DNA of 64,000 nucleotides, taken from positions 90,706,001 through 90,770,000 of the forward strand of contig NC_135656.1 of NCBI RefSeq assembly GCF_964188315.1, given 5' to 3'. Below the pieces are notes generated by a model. That model saw nothing but the letters and a program-made list of their open reading frames with translations. It did no database searches and was not told where the DNA came from. This DNA is from Podarcis muralis (lineage: Eukaryota). Each line of letters begins with the position of its first letter. Position 1 is the stretch's first letter. Of this stretch, positions 1-58,418 are shown in pieces. The position numbers were made by a program, and so were the translations under genes.

Positions 1-1604
1 AACAGTACTGCTCCCACGGCCCTGTCTGAGGCGTCCGTTTCAACCCTCATCGGTCTGCTGGGATTCACATGCAGTAGCTGCTCTTCGGACGAGAAGAGAC
101 GCTTGAGTTTCTGAAAGGACTGCTCCGCTTGCTCCGTCCAGATGAACTTCTTCTTCTTGGAGCTGAGCGTGTCGGTAATGGCCGCCGTCTGCATCGCGAA
201 CCCCTTGATGAACTTGCGGTAAAAGTTAGCAAAGCCAACAAACCGCTGGACCTCCTTCCGATTGCGCGGGCTCTTCCAGTCCAACACCGAGCGAACCTTG
301 GCGCTGTCCATGGCGAGCCCCTTGTCCGACAATTTGTAGCCCAGGAAATCCACCTCCGTCATGTCGAACTGGCACTTCTCCAGCTTGGCGTACAGTCTGT
401 GCTCCTGCAGTCTCTGCAGAACTTCCTTGACATCTCTCTCGTGAGCCTCCTGCGATTCTGAAAATATCAGGATGTCGTCCAGGAAGCAGACGCACTTCTT
501 GTAGAGGAGTCCCGCTAACACGTGATGCATGAAAGCTTGAAAACAGTGGGAGCCATTTTGTAATCCAAAGGGCATAACCCTGTATTCATAGGTGCCCAGG
601 GGCGTGAACATGGCCGTCTTCCACTCGTCGCCTTCCCGTATGCGAATCAGGTTGTACGCCCCTCGCAGATCCAACTTGGTGAAAACGCGTCCTTTTCTCA
701 CCGTCGCGAGCAGGTCGTCGATCTTGGGCATGGGGAAGGCTGAGGGCTTGGTTTTCGAGTTCAAAATTCTATAGTCCACTACAAGCCTTTTTTGGGGCGT
801 GTCCTTTTTCTTCACAAAGAATACTGGACTGCCCCCCACTGCCCTGGACTCCCGGATGAAGCCGCGCTTCAAGTTGTGATCTATGAACTCCCTGAGTTCC
901 TGCAGTTCGTCCTCAGACATGGAATACAGTTTCCCTGTCGGCAGCGTCGCCCCCGGCAGGAGGTCAATCTTGCAGTCATAAGATCTGTGGGGAGGTAGCT
1001 TGTCCGCTTCCTTCTCGCAGAAAACCTCCAAAAACGCTGCGTACTTGATGGGCACTGCTTGCAGCGTGCCTAATTGTAGCTGCGGGTCATCCTCTTCCCC
1101 TTCCGTGCTAGGCAGAATGCAATGTTCCGCACAGTAGGAGGAGCCGAAAGTCAGTTGGCGCTGGTACCAAGCCAATGCAGGGCTGTGCCTGTGCAGCCAA
1201 CTCATGCCCAATACTACAGGCGTGTCCGACAGTTGGGTGACATTGAAGCTGATGACTTCTCGGTGATTCCCAATTTGCATCACCATCGGAGGCGTTTGCT
1301 TCACCACCTGCCCCCCCAGCAATTCCCTGCCATCCACCGTGACAACCTTCAGGGGCAGTGTGGTTGGCAGTAGCGCTATGCTGTGTTGTTGAATGAAATC
1401 CAGTCCTATAAAGTCTGCGTTACTGCCAGAGTCAATGGTAATGGGTACTTCCATAGTGAGTCCATTGGGTAGCTGGAGCGATGCGGTGAGCTGCACCACT
1501 GGTTTGGGCGGGAGGGGGTCTGTGGGCTGCAAAATTTCTGGGGACTGCTTCACTGACTCGTCTGGCTGGGCCCCAGTGCCTCTTCCTCCAGCCAGACTCC
1601 GTCG
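1..1604 (-). CDS. Ty3/gypsy pol (aspartic protease and reverse transcriptase), running off the left window edge
   Basis: Manual translation of the -1 frame gives the protease motif ITIDSGSNADFI (DSG at 1425-1433), then RT motifs LDLRGAYNLIRIREGDEWKTAMFTP, YRVMPFGLQN and CFLDDILIFS (474-485), all in one frame. The ORF track shows no closed ORF in this frame, consistent with an ORF open to the edge. Confidence 0.95.
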
Positions 1605-1610
1605 TTTCCC
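1538..1610 (-). promoter_or_regulatory. -1 programmed ribosomal frameshift signal (slippery heptamer plus stem/pseudoknot)
   Basis: G GGA AAC at 1610-1604 in gag phase, 6-nt spacer, perfect 10-bp stem GTCTGGCTGG/CCAGCCAGAC. The -1 frame leads directly into the protease. Confidence 0.85.
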
Positions 1611-2627
1611 TGCTGTGGTTCTCTCTGCTGAGTTGCTTCTGTTACTGTTGCGGAGGCTGCAGTGTGCCTGTGGAGCCTCTGGGGACACTCTTTCGCCATG
1701 TGCTGCGGATTGTCGCAGATGTAACACTTCCTGTTCCCTCTAGGAGGCTTCGCTTTGACTGCTCCCGGTGTTAGGGCTCTGGTAGCTGACTGAGCCCTGG
1801 CGCCTCCAATCTCCATCGGTTCCTCTCCCCCTCCCTGCGGAGGTGTGGATTGCGCACGCGCTGCATCCCTGGGAAAGAGGGGAGGTGCTCTCGCTGGCGT
1901 GCGTCCCCAACGCCCTTCATCCTTGCTCCATGGACGTTCTTCCAGACGCACCCCAATTGTCAGCACCCGCTGGACAATTTCCTGAGTGCTCTTTGGTCTC
2001 TCCCCCCTTGCAATTTCATCTTTAACATTTGCATTCAAGCCTTCCCAAAAAAAGGTCTCTGACTGGAGCAGAATCTTTCTCCCAACCCAGCGCGTTGACC
2101 AATGCAAAAAAGCGAGAATGATACTGCCTTACAGTGGCTCTTCCTTGTTTCAACCCATGTATGTCTTTTCTGGCGATATCAATGTCTATATTAGATAAAA
2201 AACACGAATCCATCGCTTTAATGAATGCATCCGCACTTCGGAGTGCCGGATCCTTGTCTCTCCACAGATTGCGCAGCCACGCTTTAGCATCCCCATACAA
2301 ATGGGATAAGATAAACCCCACCTTCTCTTGCTCATCTCTAAAGTCTTTATCCAGCAGTTGCAGAGCAAACAGCACGTCTGCTCGGAAGTTAGGGTACTGC
2401 TGTAAATTCCCATCGAAATGAGATACAAGACTGCCTCCTCTCTTCCCCAGCCCAATCCCCTCTGATTTGGGTCCCGGTTGCCCTTGCTTAGTAAGCACTT
2501 CCAACCTGGCTTGGAGATCCTTGCAGGCTGCAGCCGCTTCATCTTCCCTTTTCCTGGATGCGAGTATCTCAGCGTTGAGTTGTGTCACTGCATTATGCAG
2601 GGCTGCTATTTGCTGTTCTGTAGTCAT
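1550..2627 (-). CDS. Ty3/gypsy gag (sushi/PEG10-like), split by a 1-bp frameshift near 2047-2053
   Basis: ORF 2022-2627 has a coiled-coil N-terminus and retrotransposon gag motifs (FDGNLQQYPNF, EKVGFILSHLYGDAKAW, LKQGRATVRQY). ORF 1550-2107 continues FWEGLNANVKDEI...EEPMEIG...CYICDNPQHMAKEC (CCHC knuckle). Confidence 0.92.
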
Positions 2628-2813: not shown

Positions 2814-2999
2814 TACTATGCTTATTTACTAATTGTTCAAGAGGCAACTGTGAACTGTTGGGTGGTAAAAACATAAATAGCTGGACAAGAGAGAGAGAGA
2901 GGAAAGTGCTCTCTAGGCAGGTCAGAGGCTATATACTTGCAATTTCCAATAACAGTTTTTTAAGACCAAAATGTGCATATTAGTACTTCAGTGGTTTGA

Positions 3000-4850
3000 A
3001 TTTTCACTCATCTAATTAAAATGCTTCCGTAAGTTTTGCGAGTTTGAACTTCAAGTAACTTGCCTATCTTTGACCAACTTTGTGTCTGCCAGTTGAGAGT
3101 AATTATGTGTTGTTGTTTTCCAGTGGTGTTATTATTGTCCGGTAGGTGGCACTAGTATTTCTACCACAAATCTTCTGGAAGACACCTGGTCTTTTGAAAA
3201 CATTCATGCTAGTCCCATGCAGTTTTAAAGTGCTCTAAACAGCTGGTTTCCCCACTCTTATATGTTGATATTGTGTGCAGACTGTCATTTGAGTAATCCC
3301 ATCAAACAAGAGCTGCAAATAAAGAACAAAGTCTGGTTTGCAGTCCTGGTTAGGAGGACACAGTCCAACAATGAGTAGTTTAGCAATTTGGTGTATGAGT
3401 TCTGCTGAAGAGCCGTAGTGATGAATGATCCGCATGCAGCCGAACCTTCTTACGATTCCACTCTATGCCTAACTCTGCACACATCCACTCCACTCAAATG
3501 GTCAGCACCATAATTTTGGCATGTGGCTTGCCATTCCCAAATAATGCTGGTGGAATACATTGGAAACAAAAATAAATTTTGATGCAAGTCAACTTTTTTA
3601 TAAAGTCAGGGGGAAACACCTTAGGATACGGTGGGTTATAAACAATATATATATATTAATTCATTTAAGGATATGCATATTTACTGCTTGCCTCACGGGT
3701 GAATTGTGAAGTCCGGTAGGTGGCACTAGTATTTCTACCACAAATCTTCTGGAAGACACCTGGTCTTTTGAAAACATTCATGCTAGTCCCATGCAGTTTT
3801 AAAGTGCTCTAAACAGCTGGTTTCCCCACTCTTATATGTTGTTCTGAAACTGCTTTTTGCAGGTGTTGTTCCAATGCTGAGATACAATCAACTAACTCGA
3901 ACCTCCCCATTCTGCGAATAAACAAGGTAGTTTTCCTAACAGCAAAACCAATGTGCAATATGACAGCATTGACATCAGAAGGAATAATTAAAGTTTTCAG
4001 CCAACCATTATTATAAAAAAGTATTCCTCTGACAGTGACAGCACTGTCTTGTGAGGAGTTGTCCTCTTACACTAATTGTATTCCCCCCAGAGTTTGCATT
4101 AGTTGGTAACACATACTTTGTGGCGGTTTTGTTTTTGTTTTTTGTTGTTGTTTTTTTGCCAGCATTGCAACACTTCCCTATTGCAGGACAGGGCTTGTGT
4201 CTCTGACAGCCTCCACACTGTATGCACTTCTTTCAGGGAGGTGTTAATTCAACGGACAGTTCAGTGTAAACTTCCTCGTGTTGCATCTAGGACTCCTGCA
4301 GCTTCCATCTTCACTAATTGTATCTATGGAAACATTTGCAGTTTTTCCTCTCCAGGGCTTGCATTCTAGGCCATGTTGCAGCAGCAGCTTGTGCAGCCTT
4401 GAATGCCTTTCTAGCATTAGATTGCAGTCTTCCAAGAGTCTTTTTTTGCAGTTTCCAGTCTCTAATCCCCAAAGCTATCAGATCTCTAATTAATGACTCT
4501 GTTAAACTCCCAAAGTCACATATCTGATTCATCAGTTTAGGGTCAGTAAGGAATTCTTTCAATGTTCCCCCTTTATGCTACACTCTTGAGCTAAAACTCA
4601 CACCTTTCATAAATCTCATTGCTCCTGGTCATGCAATACTCAAATTTATTTAGAAGCAAGCCTGCTCTTCCTGGCTTGATTGCACGGCATGGAAAATATC
4701 TACTGCCTCATGCCCTGCTATATGCAAAAACGTGGTTATCTTTTGAAGATCCTCTTTTTTCTTCCATTCTTGTAGCTTGCATACAGATGGCGAAGCCATG
4801 CTTAAACCTTTCCCTGAAATCTGCTGCATTGCCATTCCATGTGTTATGTG
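3000..4850 (-). mobile_element. Old degenerate Ty3/gypsy remnant (gag, zinc knuckle, probable protease region)
   Basis: Fragmented translations: KEDLQKITTFLHIAGHEAVDIF, EFLTDPKL..QICDFGSLTESLIRDLIALGIRD, and a decayed knuckle KKCIQCGGCQRHKPCPAIGKCC (~4150-4230). Many stops and frameshifts; left boundary approximate. Confidence 0.65.
3137..3841 (+). repeat. Perfect 131-bp dispersed direct repeat (3137-3267 and 3711-3841)
   Basis: Base-by-base comparison from GTCCGGTAGG to CTTATATGTTG shows identity. Confidence 0.95.
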
Positions 4851-6487: not shown

Positions 6488-6734
6488 AAGAAGAAGAGGA
6501 GTTTGGATTTGATATCCCGCTTTATCACTACCCGAAGGAGTCTCAAAGCGGCTAACAATCTCCTTTCCCTTCCTCCCCCACAACAAACACTCTGTGAGGT
6601 GAGTGAGGCTGAGAGACTTCAGAGAAGTGTGACTAGCCCAAGGTCACCCAGCAGCTGCATGTGGAGGAGCGGAGACGCGAACCCGGTTCCCCAGATTACG
6701 AGTCTATCACTCTTAACCACTACACCACACTGGC
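6488..6734 (-). mobile_element. tRNA-derived SINE (Squam3-like)
   Basis: Minus strand begins GCCAGTGTGGTGTAGTGGTTAAGAG (A box) with a B-box-like GGTTCGCGTCT and a (CTT)n tail. Near-identical to three other copies in the window. Confidence 0.85.
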
Positions 6735-7326
6735 GCAAGTTATGTGAATGGCGGGTTATGCTCAAATGTGATTAGCTGAGGCCTAAGACCTGTATCAGAG
6801 GCCTTCCTCTATGGTCCGCCTTAGTCAAGATCAGACTTTCAGGTGCCAGGAGCAGGGGCTTCTTGGTTGTGGTACTATCTTCCCACAAGCCCCTTTCTGC
6901 CAGGTTTTAACTGGTCTGTCGAAACCTTTTTATTCCGAGAGGCTTTTTATTATGGATTCTATTATTAGATTTAGATTAGATTCTTATGATGTTATGCAAC
7001 TGTTTAAATGGTTTAGATGCTGAGAAATTTTATTGTGAGCTGCCTTGGAATCTATTTTATTTTTTAGATAGGATAAAAATGTCCAAAATAGATAATTAAA
7101 TCACCTATCAGTATTTATTAAAACAGGTTTTGGGGGAGCAAATCAGCTATTTTAAATCTTGACTCTCCCTGATTAGATAAAAACATCAAATTTAATTAGT
7201 AGCTCCTGTGACATAAGGCCAACAAATTTACTGGAGCACCAGCTGTTGTGGGTCAGAGCTTACTTGAGCAGAAGCTTCAAAAGGTAACACTGTAAGAAAT
7301 TACAGGCATGTTTTGGGGATGGGATC

Positions 7327-7690
7327 CATGGCGGAGCAAGCCAATTGGGCTCCTGGGGTGGCGAGTGTGCCCTGCACCCAGGGGCAGGGCCAGCCGCCTG
7401 CAAGGTGGGGCAAGCTGGGGCAGGACGCTCCATGGGGCCTCTGAGGAGTCTGCCTGCCTCCTCCCACTCAGCCGCCCTACAGCTGAGGGGGAGCAGCAGG
7501 CAGACCATTTGAGGCAGTACAGAGCCTGCGGGTGCCCAAGCCACCGCGTCACTCCCAGGAGAGATGCGTGGCTCAGGCGTGCTGCAGGCCTCGCGGTGAG
7601 TGCCACCTCACATTTTGTCACTCCCCTCAGTGGTGAGACCCAGGGCGGCCCACATACCCCTTCCTCCACCCCTGGCTGGGATGTACTGTA
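7327..7690. mobile_element. Non-autonomous DNA-transposon-like repeat (sibling of 43495-43829)
   Basis: Shares CTCTGAGGAGTCTGCCTGCCTCCTCCCACTCAGCCGCCCTACAGC and CCCAAGCCACCGCGTCACTCCCAGG with the 43.5-kb copy; termini degenerate. Confidence 0.6.
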
Positions 7691-7709
7691 GCTCAGTGGC
7701 AAAGCACTG

Positions 7710-7958
7710 GAGAGCCAGTGTGGTGTAGTGGTTAAGAGCAGTAGTCTTGTAATCTGGGTTCGCATCTCCGCTCCTCCACATGCAGCTGCTGGGTGACCTT
7801 GGGTCAGTCACACTTCTTTGAAGTCTCTCAGCCCTACTCACTTCCCAGAGTGTTCGTTGCGGGGGAGGAAGGGAAAGGAGAATGTTAGCTGCTTTGAGTC
7901 TCCTTCAGGTAGTGATAAAGCGGGATGTAAAATCCAAGCTCTTCTTCTTCTCTTCTTC
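7710..7958 (+). mobile_element. tRNA-derived SINE (Squam3-like)
   Basis: GAGAGCCAGTGTGGTGTAGTGGTTAAGAG head, same body as the other copies, (CTT)n tail. Confidence 0.85.
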
Positions 7959-38318: not shown

Positions 38319-38739
38319 GCAAGAAATGGGAACACATACTAATACCTATACTGTATGACTGCTAAACCACAGAGGTGGTAGTTGCTATCGGCTTCAAATG
38401 GGCTCCCTTTCAACTTGCTCCCAGGGCCTATGGCAGCATATCCCATAACCTGTTCCCTCCCCCCCCAAAAAAAGAAAATACTCTTTGAAAGGTGATTCAA
38501 AGTCTCCCCGCTTCAAGTCCTTAAGTTGCTCCACTCTTACTTTCTCGTTGAGTTCAAGTTAACCCGCTGAAACAGATGGGACAAGGTTTTCAAACCCACC
38601 CACCGAAAACCCTCTTAACTCCATTCTTTTGCCAACAGCCCAGGTAGACCACGTCCAATTCCCTCTCCTTGCCCGATCTCCAAATTCTCTTTTCTCTCTC
38701 TCTCGCCCCCTCGAAGCAAGGAGGGCCTACAGCCTGGTC

Positions 38740-39920
38740 TGCGGGGCCCCTGAACACGAGCAGAGCGCGCACCCCACCCAGACCCCCCCCCAAAGACCGT
38801 AGGACGGGCGTCGGGGAGGGCAGAGGAGGGCGGGGTGCCGAGCTCCGGAAAGAGTCCCCCTGGCGAAGGCTACTCACGGGTCGGCTCGATCGGGCCCCCT
38901 CCCGCTGCACTCGATGGGGTTCAGCTCGTCCTGGGGGAAAGCGTGCGCCATGTAGTTGTCGTAGCCGAAGGCGAACATGCCGCGGGCGGCGTCGCGGAGC
39001 TGGGCGCGGAGCTGCGGAGGGAAGGCGCGGCTGTAGCGCTGCTCGTACTCGTCGCCGCCGCCGCCGCCGCCAACACCGACGACCCTCCTGGGGGGCGACG
39101 AGGAGGAGGCGCCGCTACCGGCTCCCCAGGCCTTGCCCAAGAAGGAGGCCCAGTGCGGGGCGACCAAGCCGGCGTCGAAGCAGCGCGCGTCCGAGAGCGG
39201 GGAGGCTCCGGCTCCGCCACTGCCGCCTCCTCCCTCCGCCGGGCTGCAGGAGAGGCCCCGCAGGCGCTGGTGGTAGAAGCCCAGGCTGGGCCCCGCCAGC
39301 CACAAGAGCGCGTGCCCGGCCAGCTTCAGCGCCACCAGCGCCAGGACCAGCGACCGCCATTGCATGGTCGGAGCCGTCAGCAGCGGCGGCGGCGGCGGTA
39401 GCACCACGGCGGCCACCGCGCGCCCCTTTCACGCGCATACTTCAAGCGGAAGCTCCGCGCCTGTCGGAGGAGGGGACCGCGGAGGAGGGAAGCGCCCGGC
39501 CTCCCCGCCCCTCAGACTCCTCCTCCTCCTCCTTCCCACGTATCCTTGGCCGAAACAATAACACGTCTCCTTTAAGGGCCGACGGGTGTGAAGAGGCGCG
39601 AGAGGGGGGTGTTGCCGAGATGGGGAGGAGGAGGAGGATTGTGACAGGGCCGTGTCGGAGTCACCGTTGCCGCCGTCATCACGCGGAGACGGCGGCGCGG
39701 CGTTTCACGCCCGTCCCCGCCCACATGAGGTTTCTTTCCGAGAAGCGGTCGAAGGAAAATGACGACAGCAACAACGCCAGCCTTGGAACTGACGTGGCGA
39801 GCCACGATTTCACCCAGCCGAAGCGGTTAGCCAATCAGAGGGCCGGGAGTGTTGCCCTTGGGTGAACTCGGCGCGGCCTTCCTGGTGACGAGCGTGAAGG
39901 GAAGCGCTGCCGCCGCTAGA
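38740..39920. promoter_or_regulatory. EDEM1 CpG island and promoter with UPRE (TGACGTGG, 39790-39797) and CCAAT (39831-39835)
   Basis: Very high CpG density; motifs read directly. EDEM1 is an established XBP1 target. Confidence 0.75.
38878..39365 (-). CDS. EDEM1: EDEM1 exon 1 coding part (ER degradation-enhancing alpha-mannosidase-like 1, GH47)
   Basis: [17 protein letters not shown]...[59 protein letters not shown]; Kozak CCGACCATG; donor GTGAGT; the 12 exons total 1935 nt. Confidence 0.97.
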
Positions 39921-40729
39921 GGGAGTGCTTGCGTTTTACCTTAGTTTGTACAGCTGCTGTAAACAAGTTTGTACAGCTGTTGAAACGTGTTGTTTTTCCC
40001 CACCTCCCCCTTTTGAATTGTGTTTGGTAAAGAGCCGAATACCTTTTATTCCTCCCACCTGTTTGATTGCTTCACGCATTGGGGTTTGAATCACGCCCCT
40101 AACCCCAGTTATGATGCTGGGATAACAAGTTGTTTTATTAATTTGACAGCTGGTGGAAGTGATTTCATAGAACCACAGAATTACAGAGTTGGAAGACAGC
40201 TCCAAGGGTCATATAGTCCAGCCCCCTGCAATGTGGGATTCCCAACTATATCATATTCGACCGATTTACAGACTGCCTTCCAATTTGGGGGTGTGGCACG
40301 TGCTTCTCTGGTCCCTTTTCCAGAGAAGATGTGACACAGCTTTTTGCTGGTTTGGAAGGAGGGGCAGGTCGCACCATTTAAAAACCTCTATAAAACTTGG
40401 TTTTTTTATTTAAAAATTGTTAAAAAAATATGTAGACTCTACTGTACAACTTCAATCGCTTTTTTAAAGATAAGACAAATAAGTGGTTGGGGGCAAAATT
40501 AGCACGTGGAGGGTTTTTTAATCAACTTTCAAAATTGTGTTGAAACGCTTTCGTAAGAGTGGTACTACCGCAAAAAAAATTAAAATGGAAACGAAAGGAT
40601 TTCTTAGCACCAAGTACAAGATAGATTTTAAAAATTAAGACGCTAATAAAATGGCAAAGGCTGCCAAGTATAGATGCTTGTTGATAGTCTCGCGTTGACC
40701 AGTAGGTCACTGCACACATTGAAACCATA

Positions 40730-41593: not shown

Positions 41594-43435
41594 TACTCCA
41601 TTTGTGTGTAGCAGTAACTCACCACAGCAATACCATTTCACTTTGTAGTTAGGTGACACATTTCATGCATCAGACAAAGCAGAATCTGGCCATGAAAGCT
41701 TACAACACATCACATTTTTAAAAGTCTTTTAAGGTACCAAACCATTTTTTTAACCACACAGATAAGATTTCAAACTGCTTCTACATGGACAAAAGCACCC
41801 TTCTCTGTAGATATATCAGAGACAAAATTTGACTATGGCTGTGATCCTAACCATGTCTACTCAGAAGCACGTACCATGGTAAGTGGGGTTAGATTACAGT
41901 CGTAGTGGGTAATATTGCAAATGATCAGTAAACATACCCTTCGTTCTAAAACAAATTTCTGAAGTATAAGACTTAGGTCTAAGCCCTACCTGTATGATCA
42001 CTTTTCAACTTTAGTGTTCACCCATAGCAAGCCAAAGCTACAGGAAATGCACAAATAATATAAGGTTTTACACAGCCCGTTTGCCATTTAGCTCTACCCT
42101 ATCCTTCCCTGAGTTGCTTTCTAAAGGTTAATGCTGTTACCTACACTGTGGGGGTAATGAGTCATTGAGCAGCAGGGACCAGCCTCGCAAGGAATCTCTG
42201 TCTCTCTCACTTTGTTTGAACACATAAGTGCTGGTTTGTATTGAAAATGAAGCATACTATGGTGGAACATAAATCACACTGATGGATCAAACCATTTTCT
42301 TGCAACATAGGGCTTGTCTACATTTGAGCGTTATTTCACTATTAATTAGACCAGACTAGTTCACACCAACATATTTGATTTTGTATATGAGAGCAACCTC
42401 AGACCACCATGCCAGTAGGCTTCTCTTTTGTCTGTCCCAGCCTTCAACCTTGTTGATTCTGTTATGCCAGATGCTGTATGCAGAACTTATTTTTTAAAAA
42501 TAAAAATCTCTGCCCCCAAAATGTGCAAAACCAGAGCCAGGGAGTTGTAAATTTGCTTGTTTAGTGTTCTGGTATTGTGCAAATCTGAGGGATCTAAACA
42601 ATTTATATCTAAATATATTAAAGCTCTTAAATTCGCAGCACACTTAAAAGAAAATTTTAGTGTAGATTGCTTGTGCAGTTTTTATTTTTATTTTGTGCAA
42701 ATCTCAAGGATCGGGGGGGGGGGCAATTATTCCATTCAGGAGCACACCAGATGTAGTTACAAGCACAGCTAAAGAAGAAACTGAAGCATTCAAGAAGTAG
42801 CAAACATGGAAAGGGGAGTAGCAGAGTAACAATTGACCCACCAACTAGAAACACTAAAACAAATTTGGAACTCCAAGGGGAAGTGGTTTTAAGGATTAAG
42901 TGGGTTACTTTAATTACTTTATTAGTAAAACACAGGCCCTCCCCACATTCAGTCCTCAACATATATTTGAGGGAATGTGACCCTCAAGAGGAAAGAGGTT
43001 GCCTACCTCTAATTTTTATGTGAAATGGGAACCATGTTGCAGATTGGTATTAGAGTTTGTTCCTACCTCTAAAAATATAAATATTAGGCAGGCACCCTCA
43101 CTATATACTGTTTTAGATGCCTATTTAAAAAATCATTTCAAGATTTTTCAATATTCATTTCTCACAGTGACCCAAAGTAACCAATTAAGAACTTCAAATA
43201 AAAATCTAAAAATATATAGCAATCCAGATAAAAGACAGGACTCCTGAACCACTAAGAGAGGCCACAGTGCCACCCTTCAAATTTAAGGCCCAAAGTTCAT
43301 GTAAAAAGGAGTGTCACTACATGGTGGCTGAAAAATTCATAAAGAGGGTGTCAGGCATGCCTCCCCGATGAAAGCATTCCACAGGCCACCATCAAAAGGG
43401 CCTCCTGTTGAGATGGCACATGAAGAAGGGCCTCA

Positions 43436-43900
43436 GATTCATAGAATTGTCAAGTTGGAAGGGACCCTGAGGATCATCTAGTCCAACCCCCTTAAAGTGG
43501 CAGAGCAAGCCAATCGGGGCGGCACAGGTGCCGTGTGCCCAGGAGCAGGGCCAGCCAGGGAACGATGCTCTGAGGAGTCTGCCTGCCTCCTCCCACTCAG
43601 CCGCCCTACAGCGGAGGGGGAGGCAGGGGGTGGACCATTTGGGGCAGCACGAAGCCTGCAGGCACCCAAGCCACCGCGTCACTCCCAGGGCACACGTGTA
43701 GTTTGGGCATGCTGCACGCCCCGCGGTGAGTGCAGCCCGCTATTTTGTCACACACACCCCTCAGTGATGACACCTGGGGCAGTCCGCCCCCACCACACTC
43801 CCCTTCTTCTTCGTCTGCCCCTGCCCCCTTACAATGCAGGAATATGCAGCTATCCCATATGGGGATCAAACCTGCAACCATAGTGTTATCAGCACCATGC
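43436..43900 (-). mobile_element. Squam2-like SINE interrupted by a DNA-transposon-like element (~43495-43829)
   Basis: The reversed SINE tail ends at ..GTCCAACCCCCT and resumes at CAATGCAGGAATATGCAGC; the insert is homologous to 7327-7690. Confidence 0.65.
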
Positions 43901-44390
43901 GGTTAGCTCAGTTATTACCATAAAGTTTAGTTAGAAAGATGATCACATGATCCAGATTGGTTCATAAGGTAAGACACAGCCCCTGGGGTCCTGTGTCACA
44001 CGAGCATTTAAAGGCAAAAACAACAACCAAAAAACCACCCAGCACTTTTGAGTCCAGAAGCTAATTGGTAGTCAGTGCAGTCATGCCAGAATTTGTGTAT
44101 TGACTGCCCTGCCCTGGTCAACAATCTGGTTGCTGAATTCTACACTAGCTGCAGCTTAGCTATGGATCCTTGTTTTTAATATTTTTAGACTTCAGCTATT
44201 ATAGTAGTAATTGTTTTATTTTAATTTCAGAAGAGGCTTTTTTTTTTTGATGAAGCAGTTTCTATTGTTTTTCTGAAGTAAGGAAGTTGGAAGGCTACAA
44301 TAGGAATCATTCTCTATGTGCTAGTTTTCTTTCGGTAATCCTTCTAAAGGACATTGCAGAAGGTATCTAAATAGGCGTGAAATCTTATGT

Positions 44391-45052
44391 CAGTGTTTCC
44401 CAACCGGTGTTCCGCGGCACACTAGTGTGCCGCGAGACGTTGCCTGGTGTGCCGTGGGAGGGAGGCGGGCGAGTCGGGCGGCGAGAGGCGGGGCGGCGGC
44501 GGCGAGGATCCGCGTCGAGCCGGGCGCGGCTCCGCGGTGGTGGTGCCGAGGTTTCTCTCTCCATTCTCCCCTCACACACACACACAGGAAACAACACAGG
44601 ATCAGCTGACAGGACCCGGCCAATGGGGCGGCGGCGGGGCAGCGCGCGCAAAAGGGAGGAGCGCGAGACAGCGGACGAGGAGGAGGCCGGCATGTCCGGG
44701 CAGCAGCAGCAACAAGAGCAGCAGCAACTCCCGGCGACGGCTCCTCAAGCCCCGGGCAACCCTACTCCCTCACCGGCCTCGGCCGCCCTCCTGCTCCACC
44801 CGCCGCCGCCTCCCCCGCCGCTGCCCCCTCCTCCGCCCGCTATCGCCGCCACCACCACAACAGCCGCCGCCGCCTCAGCTGGGCCCATGCCTGCCGGGAG
44901 TGGCGGCGGCAGCAGCAGCAGCAGCGCCCCGGCGCCCTTCCCTCCCGGCGTGATGCTGCGCGCTGACGTCACGGGGCTGTAATGGTGGTGTGCCTCAAGA
45001 TTTTTTTCATCAAACAAGTGTGCCTTTGCCCAAAAAAGGTTGGGAAACACTG
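44391..45052. mobile_element. Non-autonomous hAT element carrying GC-rich host-like cargo (Pack-type)
   Basis: Perfect 15-bp TIR CAGTGTTTCCCAACC / GGTTGGGAAACACTG; perfect 8-bp TSD TCTTATGT (44383-44390, 45053-45060); 22-bp subterminal palindrome 44413-44434; no transposase. Confidence 0.93.
44692..44949 (+). pseudogene. RANBP9: Captured N-terminal exon-1 fragment resembling RANBP9 (RanBPM), inside the hAT element
   Basis: MSGQQQQQEQQQL...AALLLHPPPPPPP...SSSSSAPAPFPPG matches the recalled order of RANBP9 motifs (MSGQ..polyQ-L, AALLLHPPPPPPP, SSAAAPFPHG). It stops before the DSALNEQEK/SPRY region. Identification is from memory and the region is low-complexity. Confidence 0.68.
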
Positions 45053-45751
45053 TCTTATGTTTACAAAAGGCTAAGCAGATTGGTGGGAGAAATTTCAGCA
45101 TCTTCTGCTGCCAAAATTCATATATCAACCATCATTGTTCCCCAAATGACTCAATTTTCTATTTTCTCACAATTTGAAGCCAGTTTTCACATTTATATGT
45201 AGCTTAAGGTAAAGGGTATATGCAGCTTAATTGGCCTTTAAAGAAACCAAAAACCATGGAGATTTAGGGATGTTGGGGAGGGGGAGATACAGACAGATAA
45301 AAATGTGTTTGTTTACAAGCACTAGACGCAATCATTCCAAAAGCAGTTTGTGGTTTCTTGAAATGCCAGTCAGGAAGACGGTTTTACTGCCTCTCCATCC
45401 ACCATCCCTAATTTAATTATCTTGTGAGAGCTGCAAAAAAAGGGGGGCGGGAGTCATAACGCATCACATGCCACTTTCCCCCTTTATTGGCCCTGTATCT
45501 TATTCTCCACCACACCCTCACTGCACAGAATCATTTTGACAACCATCAGTATAGTAGAGGCATGAGGAACCTATTATCCTCTGGATCTTGTTGGGTCATG
45601 GCTAGCATAGCCCATGCTCAGGGGTGGGGATTCTAGTCCAGACATTTGAAGGGACACAGACAGGTTCCCCATCCCTGATACAATGCTTAAAGACCTGTGC
45701 TTCTGCAAGTTGCTACAAGCCACCTTCATTGCTATTTCGAACACCCTAGTG

Positions 45752-53040: not shown

Positions 53041-53600
53041 CTGTTAAAGGAGTTCAGTAAGTGACCACCGGGTTTATACAATATAAAACATTTGTGTAAG
53101 GCAATCCTATCTAAGCCAAAGTAACTCTAGCAAAATTGCTGGAGGTTATAAAATAGCTCACCAGTAACGGGTCAGTGCTGAGGACATATGCAACCTGGTA
53201 AAGCCATAGATATTAACATTAGCAGTAGCTGCTGCAGTAGGCAACTAGGTAGATTAGAGACTCTGTGCTGCAGTGTGAACTAGATTGTGTTAGAGTATGA
53301 GCTAATGTTTGCAGTTTGCTGGTATCATGCTGGGAATCCCTGTGAGGGATTAAAGAACAATCAAGTGGATTCACAGGAAGTAGATATGCAAGTCTTATTT
53401 GCTAGAGAGATTGATAATGCTTTTGGGATCAGAGCATTCACTCGACTAGACATTCTCCTCTGCACTGTATGTTAAGAACATGCTTTTGCTTTTTTTCAAT
53501 GTTTTACTTTCAATGTTTCAATGTTTTACTTTTATGCATTGGATGTTGCCTTGGAAGTCCAGTTAAAAGGTTTTTGTTCACAATTGCTTACAATAAATAT

Positions 53601-53848
53601 AAGAAGAAGAGTTTGGTTCTGATATCCCGCTTTATCACTACCCGAAGGAGTCTCAAAGCGGCTAACATTCTCCTTTCCCTTCCTCCCCCACAACAAATAC
53701 TCTGTGAGGTGAGTGGGGCTGAGAGACTTCAGAGAAGTGTGACTAGCCCAAGGTCACCCAGCAGCTGCATGTGGAGGAGTGGAGACGCAAACCTGGTTCC
53801 CCAGATTACGAGACTACCGCTCTTAACCACTACACCACACTGGCTCTC
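53601..53848 (-). mobile_element. tRNA-derived SINE (Squam3-like)
   Basis: Same family as 6488-6734. Confidence 0.85.
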
Positions 53849-54271
53849 ATCTAAACTAATTGTCAAGCTTTCATTGTCAAGCCATGGTATTGAGAAACTT
53901 CATTTTGAACAGCATCCACCATTTTTAGGGTATAGGACCCCAGGTTTTTGTAGAAGTACTGTGTACCTATACAACACAGTCAGTTTTTTTAAATGACATA
54001 CTTTCGTAGTGCTCTGAAAAGCACTTTCGACTAATTGTAATACATAATAATAGCAATAAGTAATAAATGCTACCAAGTGGTTAATGCATTTCCTTAGACA
54101 GTGAAATTTAACAGAGTTCAAATGGAAGAAAACCCAAGCTTGCACAGTTTGCAAGCACATAGCTAAACAGTTAAAGAGCAGAACTTAGCAGTAGAGTAAC
54201 ACACCTGAAGAACTAGGTACAACACAACAAATGCAGCCACAACCAAGTAATCACAAGATGTATATACTTAC

Positions 54272-57009: not shown

Positions 57010-57214
57010 CAGTGGTAACTTGGGTTAAGTACTTAATTCGTTCCGGAGGTCCGTTCTTACCCTGAAACTGTTCTTAACCTGAAGCACCACTAGGCTAATG
57101 GGGCCTCCTGCTGCTGCCGCGCCACCAGAGCCCGATTTCTGTTCTCATCCTGAAGCAAAGTTCCTAACCTGAAGTGTATGTAACCTGAAGCGTATGTAAC
57201 CCGAGGTACCACTG
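57010..57214. mobile_element. Tc1/mariner (Tigger-like) MITE
   Basis: TA-CAGTGGTAACTTGGG ... CCCGAGGTACCACTG-TA; homologous to 41381-41593. Confidence 0.88.
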
Positions 57215-57956: not shown

Positions 57957-58418
57957 CCGTATTTTTCGTTCTATAGGACGCACTTTTTCCCCTCCAAAAA
58001 TTAAGGGGAAATGTGTGTGCGTCCTATAGAGCGAATGCAGGCTGCGCCGCTAGGCCCAAAGCCAGAACAGGGAGACGGAGCACTGCGGAGGGCTCCGTCT
58101 TGCTGTTCTAGCTTGGGGATTTCTGCGCGCACAGCCTCTCCAGGGCAGCGGGGTGCCTTCAGAAGCTAGCAAGGCTGTTCCCAAGCCAGAACAGCGAGAC
58201 GGAGGGCTCCGTCTCGCTGTTCTAGCTTGGGGATGGCTGTGCGTACAGCCTCTCCAGGGCAGCGGGCGCTGCGCTCCAAAGGCTTCAGGGATCTTTGAGG
58301 CTGGCGGTGGGGAAAAGCAGTGCTTCCCCACCACCACCAGCCCCACAAGCCCCTGAAGCACTATTTCTGGGTTAGCGGAGTCTGTAACCTGAAGCGTATG
58401 TAACCTGAGGTACCACTG
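57957..58418. mobile_element. Chimeric mariner-type MITE (left end of one family, right end of another)
   Basis: Left end TA-CCGTATTTTTCG resembles 10455; right ~65 bp match the end of 59605-59846 (GAGGTACCACTG-TA). Confidence 0.7.

What the first reader, a model, noticed from the sequence alone, without database searches (positions are those of the whole stretch)
44383..45060. Pack-type hAT transposon that appears to have captured the 5' end of RANBP9
Seen: a 662-bp element with perfect 15-bp TIRs and a perfect 8-bp TSD (hAT signature), no transposase, and a CpG-dense interior unlike the AT-rich flanks. The interior holds a Kozak-like GCCGGCATG at 44692 and 86 codons: MSGQ-polyQ-L...AALLLHPPPPPPP...SSSSSAPAPFPPG. 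Knowledge: the RANBP9 N-terminus carries these motifs in the same order (MSGQ, polyQ, AALLLHPPPPPPP, SSAAAPFPHG-DSALNEQEK), and RANBP9 is not a known neighbour of ARL8B/EDEM1. Gene-fragment capture by DNA transposons is established in plants (Pack-MULE, Pack-CACTA, Pack-TYPE) but sparsely documented in vertebrates. Inference: a DNA-level capture of RANBP9 upstream/exon-1 sequence, ending just before the folded SPRY domain. The perfect TSD and retained CpGs suggest a recent insertion, possibly from a family that has amplified with its cargo.
Basis: partly seen in the sequence, partly recalled or inferred. Interest (0 to 1): 0.9.

Follow-up and report, generated by a model that had tools for sequence, protein, structure and literature searches.

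The report
Jumping gene carrying RANBP9's start
This is a small cut-and-paste (hAT) transposon, one of several hundred copies in a lizard genome that carry a stolen piece of the start of the RANBP9 gene, and this copy is missing from the same site in other individuals; gene-carrying DNA transposons this successful are very rare in backboned animals.

Summary
A 662-bp element (44391-45052) has perfect 15-bp inverted ends, a perfect 8-bp target duplication (TCTTATGT) and a CpG-rich interior, and encodes no transposase.

The RANBP9 reading holds. Positions 44684-44950 (ATG at 44692) are co-linear with genuine reptile RANBP9 exon 1. The protein alignment score is 274 against 87±10 for shuffles, and the DNA z-score is 23.5. 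Podarcis muralis protein models show relatives of this element that carry the rest of exon 1.

Laid public reads add three points:
- An exact empty site, with a single TCTTATGT, is found in other individuals, so this is a true and fairly recent insertion.
- The element ends occur roughly 1,100-2,400 times per genome, and the RANBP9 block roughly 200-850 times.
- Subfamily markers differ strongly between two labelled organisms, so amplification continued after they split.

The RANBP9 block sits inside an older GC-rich core shared with a commoner subfamily. Whether the 175 bp upstream of the ATG is RANBP9 promoter is unproven, and no function is shown. The element lies between genes, downstream of ARL8B and about 5 kb upstream of EDEM1.

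This scan has already noted the same family on other DNA of this genome (12 notes, two followed up).

The parts
44383..44390 (.). Left copy of the 8-bp target-site duplication TCTTATGT
   Evidence: The empty-site joint 44382->45053 has 8 letters that fit both sides.
44391..44405 (+). 5' terminal inverted repeat CAGTGTTTCCCAACC (starts with the hAT-type YARNG motif, CAGTG)
   Evidence: In one search, 1920 loose ends from other copies (X24) begin exactly before 44391.
44391..44459 (+). 5' transposon backbone: the TIR plus a subterminal region with GTGTGCC motifs (44425, 44447; inverted at 44416) and an 11+11 palindrome at 44413-44434
   Evidence: Read depth is about 2900 against a flank depth of about 1.5. 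Reads of cargo-free copies leave into AT-rich sequence behind 44459.
44460..44508 (+). Left part of an older GC-rich core ('A-type'), shared with a commoner subfamily that lacks RANBP9
   Evidence: Depth is about 1465 here against about 550 further in. Behind 44508, 453 reads (X24) and 566 reads (X23) leave into a different sequence, and there are joints 44508->44960.
44509..44683 (+). Upstream part of the RANBP9 block (CCAAT at 44620-44624, GC boxes, a CA run). It is presumed to be RANBP9 5' flank/5'UTR, but the origin is not demonstrated
   Evidence: It shares the depth of the coding part in X23. It shows no homology to the upstream region of the distant RANBP9 locus L002 (z = -0.8). L001 matches from 44677.
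44684..44950 (+). Segment homologous to RANBP9 exon 1, from 8 nt before the ATG at 44692 to codon 86 (...APAPFPPG)
44692..44982 (+). Open frame of 96 codons plus TAA. The last 10 codons (VMLRADVTGL) are read from non-RANBP9 core DNA
   Evidence: No Pfam domain.
44951..44979 (+). Right part of the A-type GC-rich core (contains TGACGTCA at 44964-44971)
   Evidence: Depth rises to about 1840. At 44954, 2163 of 2185 X24 reads carry C where this copy has T, and that total exceeds the depth of the RANBP9 block. Joints land at 44960.
44980..45052 (+). 3' transposon backbone with GTGTGCC motifs at 44988 and 45018, and the 3' TIR at 45038-45052
   Evidence: Depth is about 3100. Reads of cargo-free copies join from AT-rich sequence before 44980.
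45053..45060 (.). Right copy of the 8-bp target-site duplication TCTTATGT

Best explanation
This is one copy of a young, non-autonomous hAT DNA transposon, a 'Pack-TIR' or 'Pack-hAT' element. Its interior was replaced by host DNA.

**What is shown**
- The 69-bp and 73-bp ends are the mobile backbone: a 15-bp TIR plus subterminal GTGTGCC repeats.
- The 520-bp interior is cargo in two layers. The outer layer is a GC-rich core shared with a commoner subfamily (44460-44508 and 44951-44979). Inside it lies a 442-bp block whose 3' 267 bp are the start of RANBP9 exon 1.
- The loaded element was mobilised as a unit. Several hundred genomic copies share the same internal junctions.
- This copy inserted between ARL8B and EDEM1 with an 8-bp duplication, and the intact empty site survives in other individuals.

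**What is inferred**
- The cargo was acquired by template switching during repair or replication of a broken element (gap filling, or fork stalling with template switching and then transposition).
- One capture took in the whole of exon 1 and the start of intron 1. Serial internal deletions then produced this shorter version, which ends at codon 86 and lacks the exon's splice donor.
- Movement depends on a transposase supplied in trans by an autonomous hAT that was not found here.
- The 96-codon frame is a by-product, not a gene. It is only a disordered low-complexity N-terminus, it ends in core DNA, and family members carry many different deletions.
- At most, this copy acts as a stray CpG-island-like fragment about 5 kb upstream of EDEM1, pointing away from it.
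For: **Structure.** TIR, TSD and composition.

**Mobility.**
- An X12 contig of 1293 nt (depth 9.8) runs 43900-44382 and then 45053-45599 directly.
- Five X24 reads and two X23 reads show the same 670-nt skip, with 8 letters shared between the two sides.
- No other X12 contig covers the flanks.

**Copy number.**, summing both read-direction columns.
- Flank depth is about 1.5 in X24 and about 2.8 in X23; about 1.3 is expected from the letters read, assuming a genome of about 1.5 Gb.
- Depth is about 2900-3100 at the ends.
- Depth over 44641-44754 is about 1075 in X24 and about 555 in X23.

**Family target preference.** The flank consensus of other copies is ...CTCTAGAG|TIR and TIR|GTCTAGAC, giving nTCTAGAn, which fits the hAT rule nTnnnnAn.

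**RANBP9 origin.**
- P0003 matches human RANBP9 7nsc_A at E = 1.1e-41.
- The element peptide matches P0003 at E = 4e-7, 54% identity, 88% coverage.
- The score is 274 against shuffles 86.7±10.5, maximum 133.
- The DNA z-score is 23.5.

**One capture followed by deletions.** Podarcis muralis models show this.
- P0007 and P0010 read ...[14 protein letters not shown](S)[20 protein letters not shown]...HYKG.
- P0008 runs from HYKG straight into WETL, which is the translated TIR.
- P0024 and P0045 begin GGE[KR]RGGGGEDPRR, the translation of window 44478-44519. That stretch crosses the 44508/44509 junction, and it is fused to EKELKRRL.

**Recent activity.** One search shows markers that are abundant in X24 and rare in X23.
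- Deletion 44550-44630: 455 against 69 reads.
- Deletion 44743-44826: 590 against 3 reads.
- CGC inserted after 44843: 522 against 0 reads.
Against: - The parental RANBP9 locus of this genome could not be read with the tools. The donor is therefore inferred from an orthologue in a distant reptile and from element-derived models in Podarcis.
- The 175 bp upstream of the ATG has no demonstrated source.
- No autonomous partner was found.
- Copy numbers rest on sampling at about 1.3-fold coverage, with a noisy flank baseline and GC bias, so they may be off by a factor of two or more.
- The empty-site haplotype differs from the reference flanks by 27 substitutions and 20 gap letters in 1030 nt. The individuals compared therefore belong to a well-diverged lineage, and the insertion may be lineage-specific rather than very young.
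- This copy carries about 7 near-private substitutions against the family majority.
- Its own TSD (TCTTATGT) does not fit nTnnnnAn at positions 2 and 7.
Confidence: 0.9

Rival explanations
1. The similarity to RANBP9 is a coincidence of low-complexity sequence (poly-Q, poly-P, poly-S). The interior is just the GC-rich core of a MITE family.
For: - The peptide alone finds no RANBP9 chain in the PDB.
- It finds only two proteins in a library of 1.8 billion.
- Part of the interior (44460-44508 and 44951-44979) is indeed a core shared with copies that lack RANBP9.
Against: - The alignment score is 274 against a maximum of 133 in 2000 composition-preserving shuffles.
- The DNA z-score is 23.5.
- The motifs fall in the same order from MSGQ to APAPFP.
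- Family members in Podarcis continue into the unambiguous, non-repetitive RANBP9 sequence [52 protein letters not shown].
Confidence: 0.02
2. This short cargo is an independent, separate capture that truly ended at codon 86. It is not a deletion derivative of a longer element that carried all of exon 1.
For: - In this genome's reads, no prominent loose end at 44950 leading into the rest of exon 1 appears among the listed ones.
- Template switching can stop anywhere.
Against: - The Podarcis models P0024 and P0045 share the left junction (the translation of 44478-44519 crosses 44508/44509), yet they continue into the distal part of exon 1. The long and short forms therefore share one capture junction.
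- Many other internal deletion variants exist (P0008, P0012; joints).
- 324 loose ends were not shown, so absence from the list is weak evidence.
Confidence: 0.2
3. The cargo matters functionally. The captured CpG-island fragment is an active promoter or start site (as in the bat HelibatN3 NUBPL element), or a source of small RNAs. Either effect helped this subfamily outcompete cargo-free copies or alters nearby genes such as EDEM1 or ARL8B.
For: - CpG o/e is 0.89, against 0.22 in the flanks. That fits a young age but also protection from methylation.
- CCAAT, GC-box and TGACGTCA motifs are present.
- Copies with cargo make up about half of all copies with these ends.
- Contigs from an RNA library contain pieces of the element.
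Against: - RNA contigs with element pieces are expected from hundreds of intronic copies or from DNA carry-over.
- No read-out transcript from this copy was seen. The RNA contigs on the flanks are short and have a depth of 5-7.
- This copy lacks the exon-1 splice donor.
- The origin of the presumed promoter part is unproven.
Confidence: 0.1
4. The loaded element did not arise in this lineage. It captured RANBP9 in another species and arrived by horizontal transfer, as several vertebrate hAT families have.
For: - hAT families are known to transfer horizontally among tetrapods, squamates included. This rests on general knowledge and was not tested here.
- The parental locus in this genome was not examined.
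Against: - The cargo carries lacertid-type RANBP9 features ([22 protein letters not shown]) that are shared with the Podarcis models but not with the more distant reptile P0003. All of those Podarcis models are themselves element-derived, however.
- L001, from another public run, is 94.5% identical over 163 nt and keeps a gene-like PATSAPPPP stretch that the element has lost.
Confidence: 0.04

Closest known systems
Pack-TIR elements of animals (Tan et al. 2021, Nat Commun 12:4280, PMC8277862), e.g. Pack-hAT-N8_XT carrying the CAPSL 5'UTR in Xenopus tropicalis
   Same: A non-autonomous TIR transposon (hAT in the frog example) whose interior is host gene DNA, here a 5' end. It is bounded by TIRs and distinct TSDs, and its multicopy forms favour GC-rich cargo. 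The proposed origin, by template switching during gap filling or fork stalling, is the same.
   Different: That survey of 100 animal genomes found 370 Pack-TIRs, of which only four were multicopy (three in frog, one in alligator). The example it describes, Pack-hAT-N8_XT, lies on three chromosomes. Here the read depth indicates hundreds of copies of the loaded element, nested cargo, many deletion derivatives, and amplification that differs between lineages.
HelibatN3 Helitrons of vespertilionid bats carrying the NUBPL promoter, six codons and a splice donor (Grabundzija et al. 2016, PMC4778049)
   Same: A vertebrate DNA transposon that picked up the promoter-proximal 5' end of a host gene and amplified it massively. 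Promoters of 15 genes reached 4,690 copies. It is the best functional analogue if the cargo here proves to be an active promoter.
   Different: That is a rolling-circle Helitron, which captures by read-through of its 3' end and makes no TIRs or TSD. This is a cut-and-paste hAT. This copy lacks the splice donor, and promoter activity is untested here.
Pack-MULEs, Pack-CACTA and Pack-TYPE elements of plants
   Same: TIR transposons carrying host gene fragments, often GC-rich 5' ends, sometimes stitched from several loci, and amplified as non-autonomous elements.
   Different: They belong to other superfamilies (Mutator, CACTA) with 9-bp or 3-bp TSDs, and they are plant elements. This comparison rests on general knowledge and, not on a sequence test.
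Genuine RANBP9 (RanBPM) gene, exon 1
   Same: Positions 44684-44950 are co-linear with the first 89 or so codons of reptile RANBP9, including MSGQ, the Q-run, AALLLHPPPP and APAPFP.
   Different: The element has no SPRY, LisH, CTLH or CRA part and no splice donor. The frame ends in transposon core DNA. It is flanked by TIRs and a TSD in the ARL8B-EDEM1 spacer, and it is absent from that site in other individuals.

Membership tests
hAT superfamily (non-autonomous member) | 8-bp target-site duplication | tested here: met
   TCTTATGT occurs on both sides. The empty-site joint has 8 letters that fit both sides.
hAT superfamily (non-autonomous member) | Short TIRs beginning 5'-YARNG | tested here: met
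   A perfect 15-bp TIR beginning CAGTG.
hAT superfamily (non-autonomous member) | Target-site consensus nTnnnnAn | tested here: inconclusive
   The flank consensus of other copies gives nTCTAGAn, which fits, but letter agreement is only about 0.39. This copy's own TSD, TCTTATGT, has C at position 2 and G at position 7.
hAT superfamily (non-autonomous member) | Cut-and-paste mobility: an exact empty site exists | tested here: met
   The joint 44382->45053 appears in an X12 contig (depth 9.8), in 5 X24 reads and in 2 X23 reads.
hAT superfamily (non-autonomous member) | A cognate autonomous element encoding a hAT transposase (DDE plus hAT dimerisation domain) with the same ends | not testable with these tools
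   There is none in the 64-kb window.
Pack-TIR / transduplicating TIR element | The interior is host-gene DNA, not transposon DNA | tested here: met
   Positions 44684-44950 are homologous to RANBP9 exon 1.
Pack-TIR / transduplicating TIR element | The parental copy of the cargo is identified elsewhere in the same genome | not testable with these tools
   Only an orthologue from another reptile (L002) and a related public contig (L001) could be fetched. The species' own RANBP9 locus was out of reach.
Pack-TIR / transduplicating TIR element | Cargo-free relatives with the same ends exist | tested here: met
   Reads leave into AT-rich canonical interior behind 44459 and enter from it before 44980. 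A short form joins 44454 to 45030 through 9 letters.
Pack-TIR / transduplicating TIR element | Multicopy: the loaded element itself transposed | tested here: met
   Depth over the RANBP9 block is about 555-1075 against flanks of 1.5-2.8. Shared internal junctions are seen in hundreds of reads.
Functional RANBP9 paralogue | SPRY, LisH, CTLH and CRA domains and an intact exon structure | tested here: not met
   No Pfam family is found on the 201-aa frame. Homology stops at codon 86, before the conserved LNEQEKEL... stretch.
Processed retrocopy of RANBP9 | mRNA-derived copy: a poly-A tail, a variable-length TSD and no TIRs | tested here: not met
   There is no poly-A tail, and the copy is bounded by 15-bp TIRs and an 8-bp TSD. 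In Podarcis relatives the sequence after HYKG looks like the G-rich start of an intron. That last point is an inference.

The most novel reading that the evidence does not exclude
The RANBP9-loaded subfamily owes its success to its cargo. Under this reading, the captured CpG-island fragment stays unmethylated and transcriptionally active. It would then scatter hundreds of orphan promoters and start codons through a lizard genome, as the bat HelibatN3 Helitron does with the NUBPL promoter. It might also feed small RNAs against RANBP9, which general knowledge describes as a germline factor. That would make it the first cut-and-paste transposon in a vertebrate shown to spread a working host promoter at this scale, and it is still polymorphic and active.
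Probability: 0.1. Interest if true: 0.85.

Novelty: new variant of a known kind. Interest (0 to 1): 0.6.

Why it matters
Host-gene capture by cut-and-paste transposons is well documented in plants. In animals, the one broad survey found almost only single-copy cases, and it concluded that most arise without transposition (PMC8277862).

A lizard hAT family would be an outlier for three reasons. The loaded element has reached hundreds of copies. It keeps producing deletion and subfamily variants. It is still polymorphic for presence or absence at individual sites. It therefore offers natural material for asking how cargo is acquired, because the junctions are still readable.

It also lets one ask whether GC-rich or promoter cargo helps an element spread, and what hundreds of dispersed mini CpG islands do to neighbouring genes.

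There is a practical consequence as well. The family seeds false 'RANBP9/RANBP10-like' gene models in lacertid annotations. Six such Podarcis muralis entries turned up here.

Tried and rejected
- **PDB search with the 96-aa peptide.** It returned only low-complexity chance hits and no RANBP9. The link had to go through P0003 instead.
- **Exhaustive search of protein representatives.** It gave two hits: P0001, which is useful, and P0002, a bacterial proline-rich repeat protein that is a chance match.
- **Word-indexed protein searches with the 96-aa and 201-aa frames.** Only P0001 and P0003 came back, so no further copies could be fetched as DNA.
- **Full-length lacertid RANBP9.** The search's length window excludes it for short queries, and I did not type sequences from memory.
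- **L002 upstream region against 44460-44683.** No homology was found. This neither supports nor refutes promoter capture, because that species is distant (the coding part is only 67% identical).
- **L001.** It matches 44677-44838 at 94.5% and then runs into a different CpG island, with no TIR in the following 1.5 kb. It may be a chimeric assembly at a CCG run or another locus, so I did not use it as proof of the parental gene.
- **Second copy in the window.** There is none. The TIR-like pair at 58318/58727 (2 mismatches each) encloses unrelated sequence, and the seed hit at 57095 lies in a SINE-like repeat.
- **Exact-pattern scan of metagenome contigs for the first 30 nt of the element.** No match.
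- **Rfam.** Nothing near threshold.
- **Literature.** No paper holds the TIR string, and none holds all three of RANBP9, transposon and Podarcis.
- **Read shares from the run search.** I did not take shares of 0.5-0.73 as genotypes, because divergent flanks and the repeated interior confound them.
Full report
**Observation**

- TCTTATGT stands at 44383-44390 and again at 45053-45060.
- CAGTGTTTCCCAACC stands at 44391-44405, and its exact reverse complement at 45038-45052.
- A scan of the whole window allowing up to 3 mismatches finds these two as the only perfect matches.
- The 662-bp element has GC 0.69. Its interior 44460-44979 has GC 0.74 and CpG observed/expected 0.89. About 2.8 kb of flank has GC 0.44 and CpG o/e 0.22.
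- The ATG at 44692 opens a 96-codon frame that ends with TAA at 44980-44982.
- No Pfam family is found on the longest frame through the element. Nothing in Rfam comes near threshold.

**Anatomy of the ends**

GTGTGCC occurs four times directly (44425, 44447, 44988, 45018) and once inverted (44416). All five lie within about 70 bp of the termini. An 11+11 perfect palindrome sits at 44413-44434. The CAGTG terminus, the 8-bp duplication and the subterminal short repeats are the hallmarks of a hAT element. That assignment rests on general knowledge of the superfamily.

**Is the interior RANBP9?**

The peptive-only searches were uninformative. The peptide found only low-complexity chance hits in the PDB and two proteins in the 1.8-billion representative library.

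The word-indexed search was more useful. It returned P0003, a 153-aa ORF from a public reptile contig (L002). P0003 matches human Ran-binding protein 9 (7nsc_A) at E = 1.1e-41. That match runs from AALLLHPPPP through [15 protein letters not shown] to LRVHYKG, and it is weaker to RANBP10. P0003 is therefore genuine RANBP9 exon 1.

The element peptide aligns with P0003 from MSGQQ to APAPFP.
- A Smith-Waterman score of 274 compares with 86.7±10.5 (maximum 133) for 2000 shuffles of the peptide. Composition therefore does not explain the match.
- At DNA level, 44684-44950 aligns with L002 1537-1818 at 67% identity. Its z-score is 23.5 against dinucleotide shuffles.
- The stretch upstream (44460-44683) and the tail (44951 onward) score no better than shuffles against L002.

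So the coding start of RANBP9 is demonstrably present. The claim that promoter DNA came with it is not demonstrated. It is not refuted either, because L002 comes from a distant species.

**Relatives show a longer original cargo**

A search with P0003 returned six small UniProt models from Podarcis muralis.
- P0007 and P0010 read ...[14 protein letters not shown](S)[28 protein letters not shown]...LRVHYKG. The first part is nearly identical to the window's peptide.
- P0008 runs from ...HYKG straight into WETL, which is the translation of the TIR GGTTGGGAAACACTG.
- P0024 and P0045 begin GGE[KR]RGGGGEDPRR, the translation of window 44478-44519, fused to EKELKRRL.
- P0012 and P0008 begin with frame-shifted translations of the Q-run and GNPTPSPASAALLLH regions.

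These are element copies with different internal deletions. Some share this copy's left internal junction yet reach the end of exon 1. The sequence that follows HYKG (RGTEGGRGRG...) resembles the G-rich start of intron 1 seen in L002. That points to capture of DNA rather than mRNA, though this is an inference.

The most economical reading is one capture of all of exon 1, followed by many deletions. This copy is a derivative that lost everything after codon 86, including the splice donor.

**Reads from public runs**

I laid two raw whole-genome runs on 43900-45599 at 90% likeness or better: X24 (organism A) and X23 (organism B). I also laid one set of DNA contigs (X12, organism A) and one set of RNA-library contigs (X25).

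*1. Empty site.*
- A 1293-nt X12 contig (depth 9.8) covers 43900-44382 and continues directly at 45053. No other X12 contig covers the flanks.
- Five X24 reads and two X23 reads show the same 670-nt skip, with 8 letters fitting both sides.
- This is the pre-insertion allele with a single TCTTATGT.
- None of the four runs showed the filled junction, although coverage of the raw runs is only about 1.3-fold.
- The empty haplotype differs from the reference flanks by 27 substitutions and 20 gap letters in 1030 nt. The insertion may therefore be specific to a diverged lineage rather than extremely young. That also fits the seven or so near-private substitutions of this copy against the family majority (44525, 44592, 44716, 44822, 44954, 44997, 45011).

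*2. Copy number.* Depths below sum the two read-direction columns.

| Region | X24 (organism A) | X23 (organism B) |
|---|---|---|
| Flanks, measured | about 1.5 | about 2.8 |
| Ends | about 2900-3100 | about 2900-3300 |
| 44641-44754 (RANBP9 block) | about 1075 | about 555 |

- About 1.3 is expected in the flanks from the letters read, assuming a genome of about 1.5 Gb.
- Depending on which baseline is used, this gives about 1,100-2,400 copies of the ends.
- It gives about 700-850 copies of the RANBP9 block in A and about 200-430 in B.
- These figures are uncertain by a factor of two or more, from baseline noise and GC bias.

*3. Borders.*
- Reads of cargo-free copies leave into AT-rich sequence behind 44459 and enter from AT-rich sequence before 44980.
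- A short form joins 44454 to 45030 through CGAGCGAGT.
- The cargo is therefore 44460-44979.

*4. Nested cargo.*
- Behind 44508, 453 reads (X24) and 566 reads (X23) leave into a different GC-rich sequence. More than 200 reads per run rejoin at about 44960.
- Depth over 44470-44526 and 44926-44982 is two to three times that of the RANBP9 block.
- At 44954, 2163 of 2185 X24 reads carry C where this copy has T, and that total is far above the depth of the RANBP9 block (about 300-790 in the preceding bins).
- So 44460-44508 and 44951-44979 belong to an older, commoner GC-rich core. The 442-bp RANBP9 block (44509-44950) replaced the middle of that core.

*5. Lineage-specific bursts.*

| Marker | X24 reads | X23 reads |
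|---|---|---|
| Deletion 44550-44630 | 455 | 69 |
| Deletion 44743-44826 | 590 | 3 |
| CGC inserted after 44843 | 522 | 0 |

- Linked base changes at 44540, 44676 and 44715 follow the same pattern.
- The loaded element therefore kept amplifying after the two organisms separated.
- This copy belongs to the older form that both share.

*6. Target preference.* The flank consensus of other copies is ...CTCTAGAG before the TIR and GTCTAGAC after it. That gives nTCTAGAn, which fits the hAT rule, though letter agreement is only about 0.39.

*7. RNA.* RNA-library contigs contain pieces of the element and about 150 nt of each flank at depth 5-7. This shows neither promoter activity nor read-out from this copy.

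**Genomic setting**

EDEM1 exon 1 lies on the minus strand at 38874-39416. It opens the GH47 profile and reads ...[21 protein letters not shown]...[15 protein letters not shown]. It sits in a CpG island at 38.6-40.0 kb.

ARL8B exons lie on the minus strand at about 56.0, 54.3, 52.9, 52.0 and 51.7 kb. Its last codons (DITLQWLIQHSKSRRS, then stop) are at about 49.69 kb.

The element is therefore intergenic, about 4.6 kb beyond the ARL8B stop codon and about 5 kb upstream of the EDEM1 start. Its RANBP9 frame is on the strand opposite to both genes. RANBP9 is not a neighbour here.

**Mechanism**

Shown:
- a mobile hAT backbone;
- a composite host-derived interior;
- amplification of the loaded element as a unit;
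- an insertion that is absent in other individuals.

Inferred:
- cargo acquisition by template switching during double-strand-break or gap repair, or at a stalled fork, followed by transposition. [quoted passage not shown];
- mobilisation in trans by an unseen autonomous hAT;
- serial internal deletions by abortive gap repair.

The open frame is best read as a by-product of the capture, not a gene.

**Comparison with what is known**

Tan et al. 2021 (PMC8277862) found 370 Pack-TIRs in 100 animal genomes. Only four were multicopy, and the example they describe is a hAT-N8_XT element carrying a CAPSL 5'UTR on three chromosomes. They noted that multicopy cases favour GC-rich cargo.

The closest vertebrate analogue in scale is a Helitron, not a TIR element. 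HelibatN3 carries the NUBPL promoter, six codons and a splice donor. Captured promoters of 15 genes together reached 4,690 copies and drive chimeric transcripts (PMC4778049).

The present family is the same kind of thing as a Pack-hAT, but it lies far outside the reported animal range in copy number and in ongoing diversification. I found no paper describing it.

**Earlier notes of this scan**

This scan has noted the same family repeatedly in this genome. Two follow-ups reported hundreds of copies and a two-piece cargo. My read-depth and junction analysis reaches the same conclusions independently from this copy. It adds the empty-site allele, the target consensus, the lineage-specific subfamilies and the single-capture-then-deletion argument.

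**Verdict**

It is a real and fairly recent insertion of a highly amplified Pack-hAT. As a phenomenon it is interesting. As a single locus it is one copy of hundreds, with no demonstrated function.

Noticed in passing
Proteins P0007, P0008, P0010, P0012, P0024, P0045 (Podarcis muralis UniProt entries): Six small gene models in a lacertid annotation are pieces of this transposon family's RANBP9 cargo. One is named RANBP10, and one reads through the TIR (…HYKGWETL). The family appears to seed false RANBP9/10-like gene models.
   Followed up: partly
L001:1-1751 (public contig): The first 162 nt are 94.5% identical to window 44677-44838 and keep a gene-like PATSAPPPP stretch. The contig then runs into a different CpG island with an ATG and a GTGAGT donor, followed by unique AT-rich DNA with no TIR. 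It is either a chimeric assembly at a CCG run, the true RANBP9 locus misjoined, or another kind of RANBP9 fusion.
   Followed up: partly
window 44014-44184: The left flank contains a moderately repeated segment. DNA-contig word depth is 37-59 against 9.8 around it, and raw-read depth is also raised.
   Followed up: no
window 43400-43900, 7260-7765, 6503-6775, 53600-53900: A GC-rich interspersed repeat recurs in the window. ORFs share strings such as AAEWEEAGRLLR, and FITTRRSLKAAN...SPRSPSSCMWRSGDAN. The copy at 43.4-43.9 kb lies 500 bp from the hAT insertion and explains the second GC peak.
   Followed up: no
window 1550-2627, minus strand: Two adjacent ORFs look like a retroelement gag. One contains a CCHC zinc-knuckle-like string, CYICDNPQHMAKEC.
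   Followed up: no
window 44444-44452 and 44444-45018 (joints on opposite strands): Tens of reads, more in X23 than in X24, join the 5' subterminal region to itself or to the 3' subterminal region in inverted orientation. This suggests fold-back or head-to-head rearranged copies of the backbone.
   Followed up: no
window 38600-40000: The CpG island holding EDEM1 exon 1 (minus strand) is the only large native CpG island near the element. The hAT cargo forms a second, imported island-like patch 5 kb upstream of it.
   Followed up: partly
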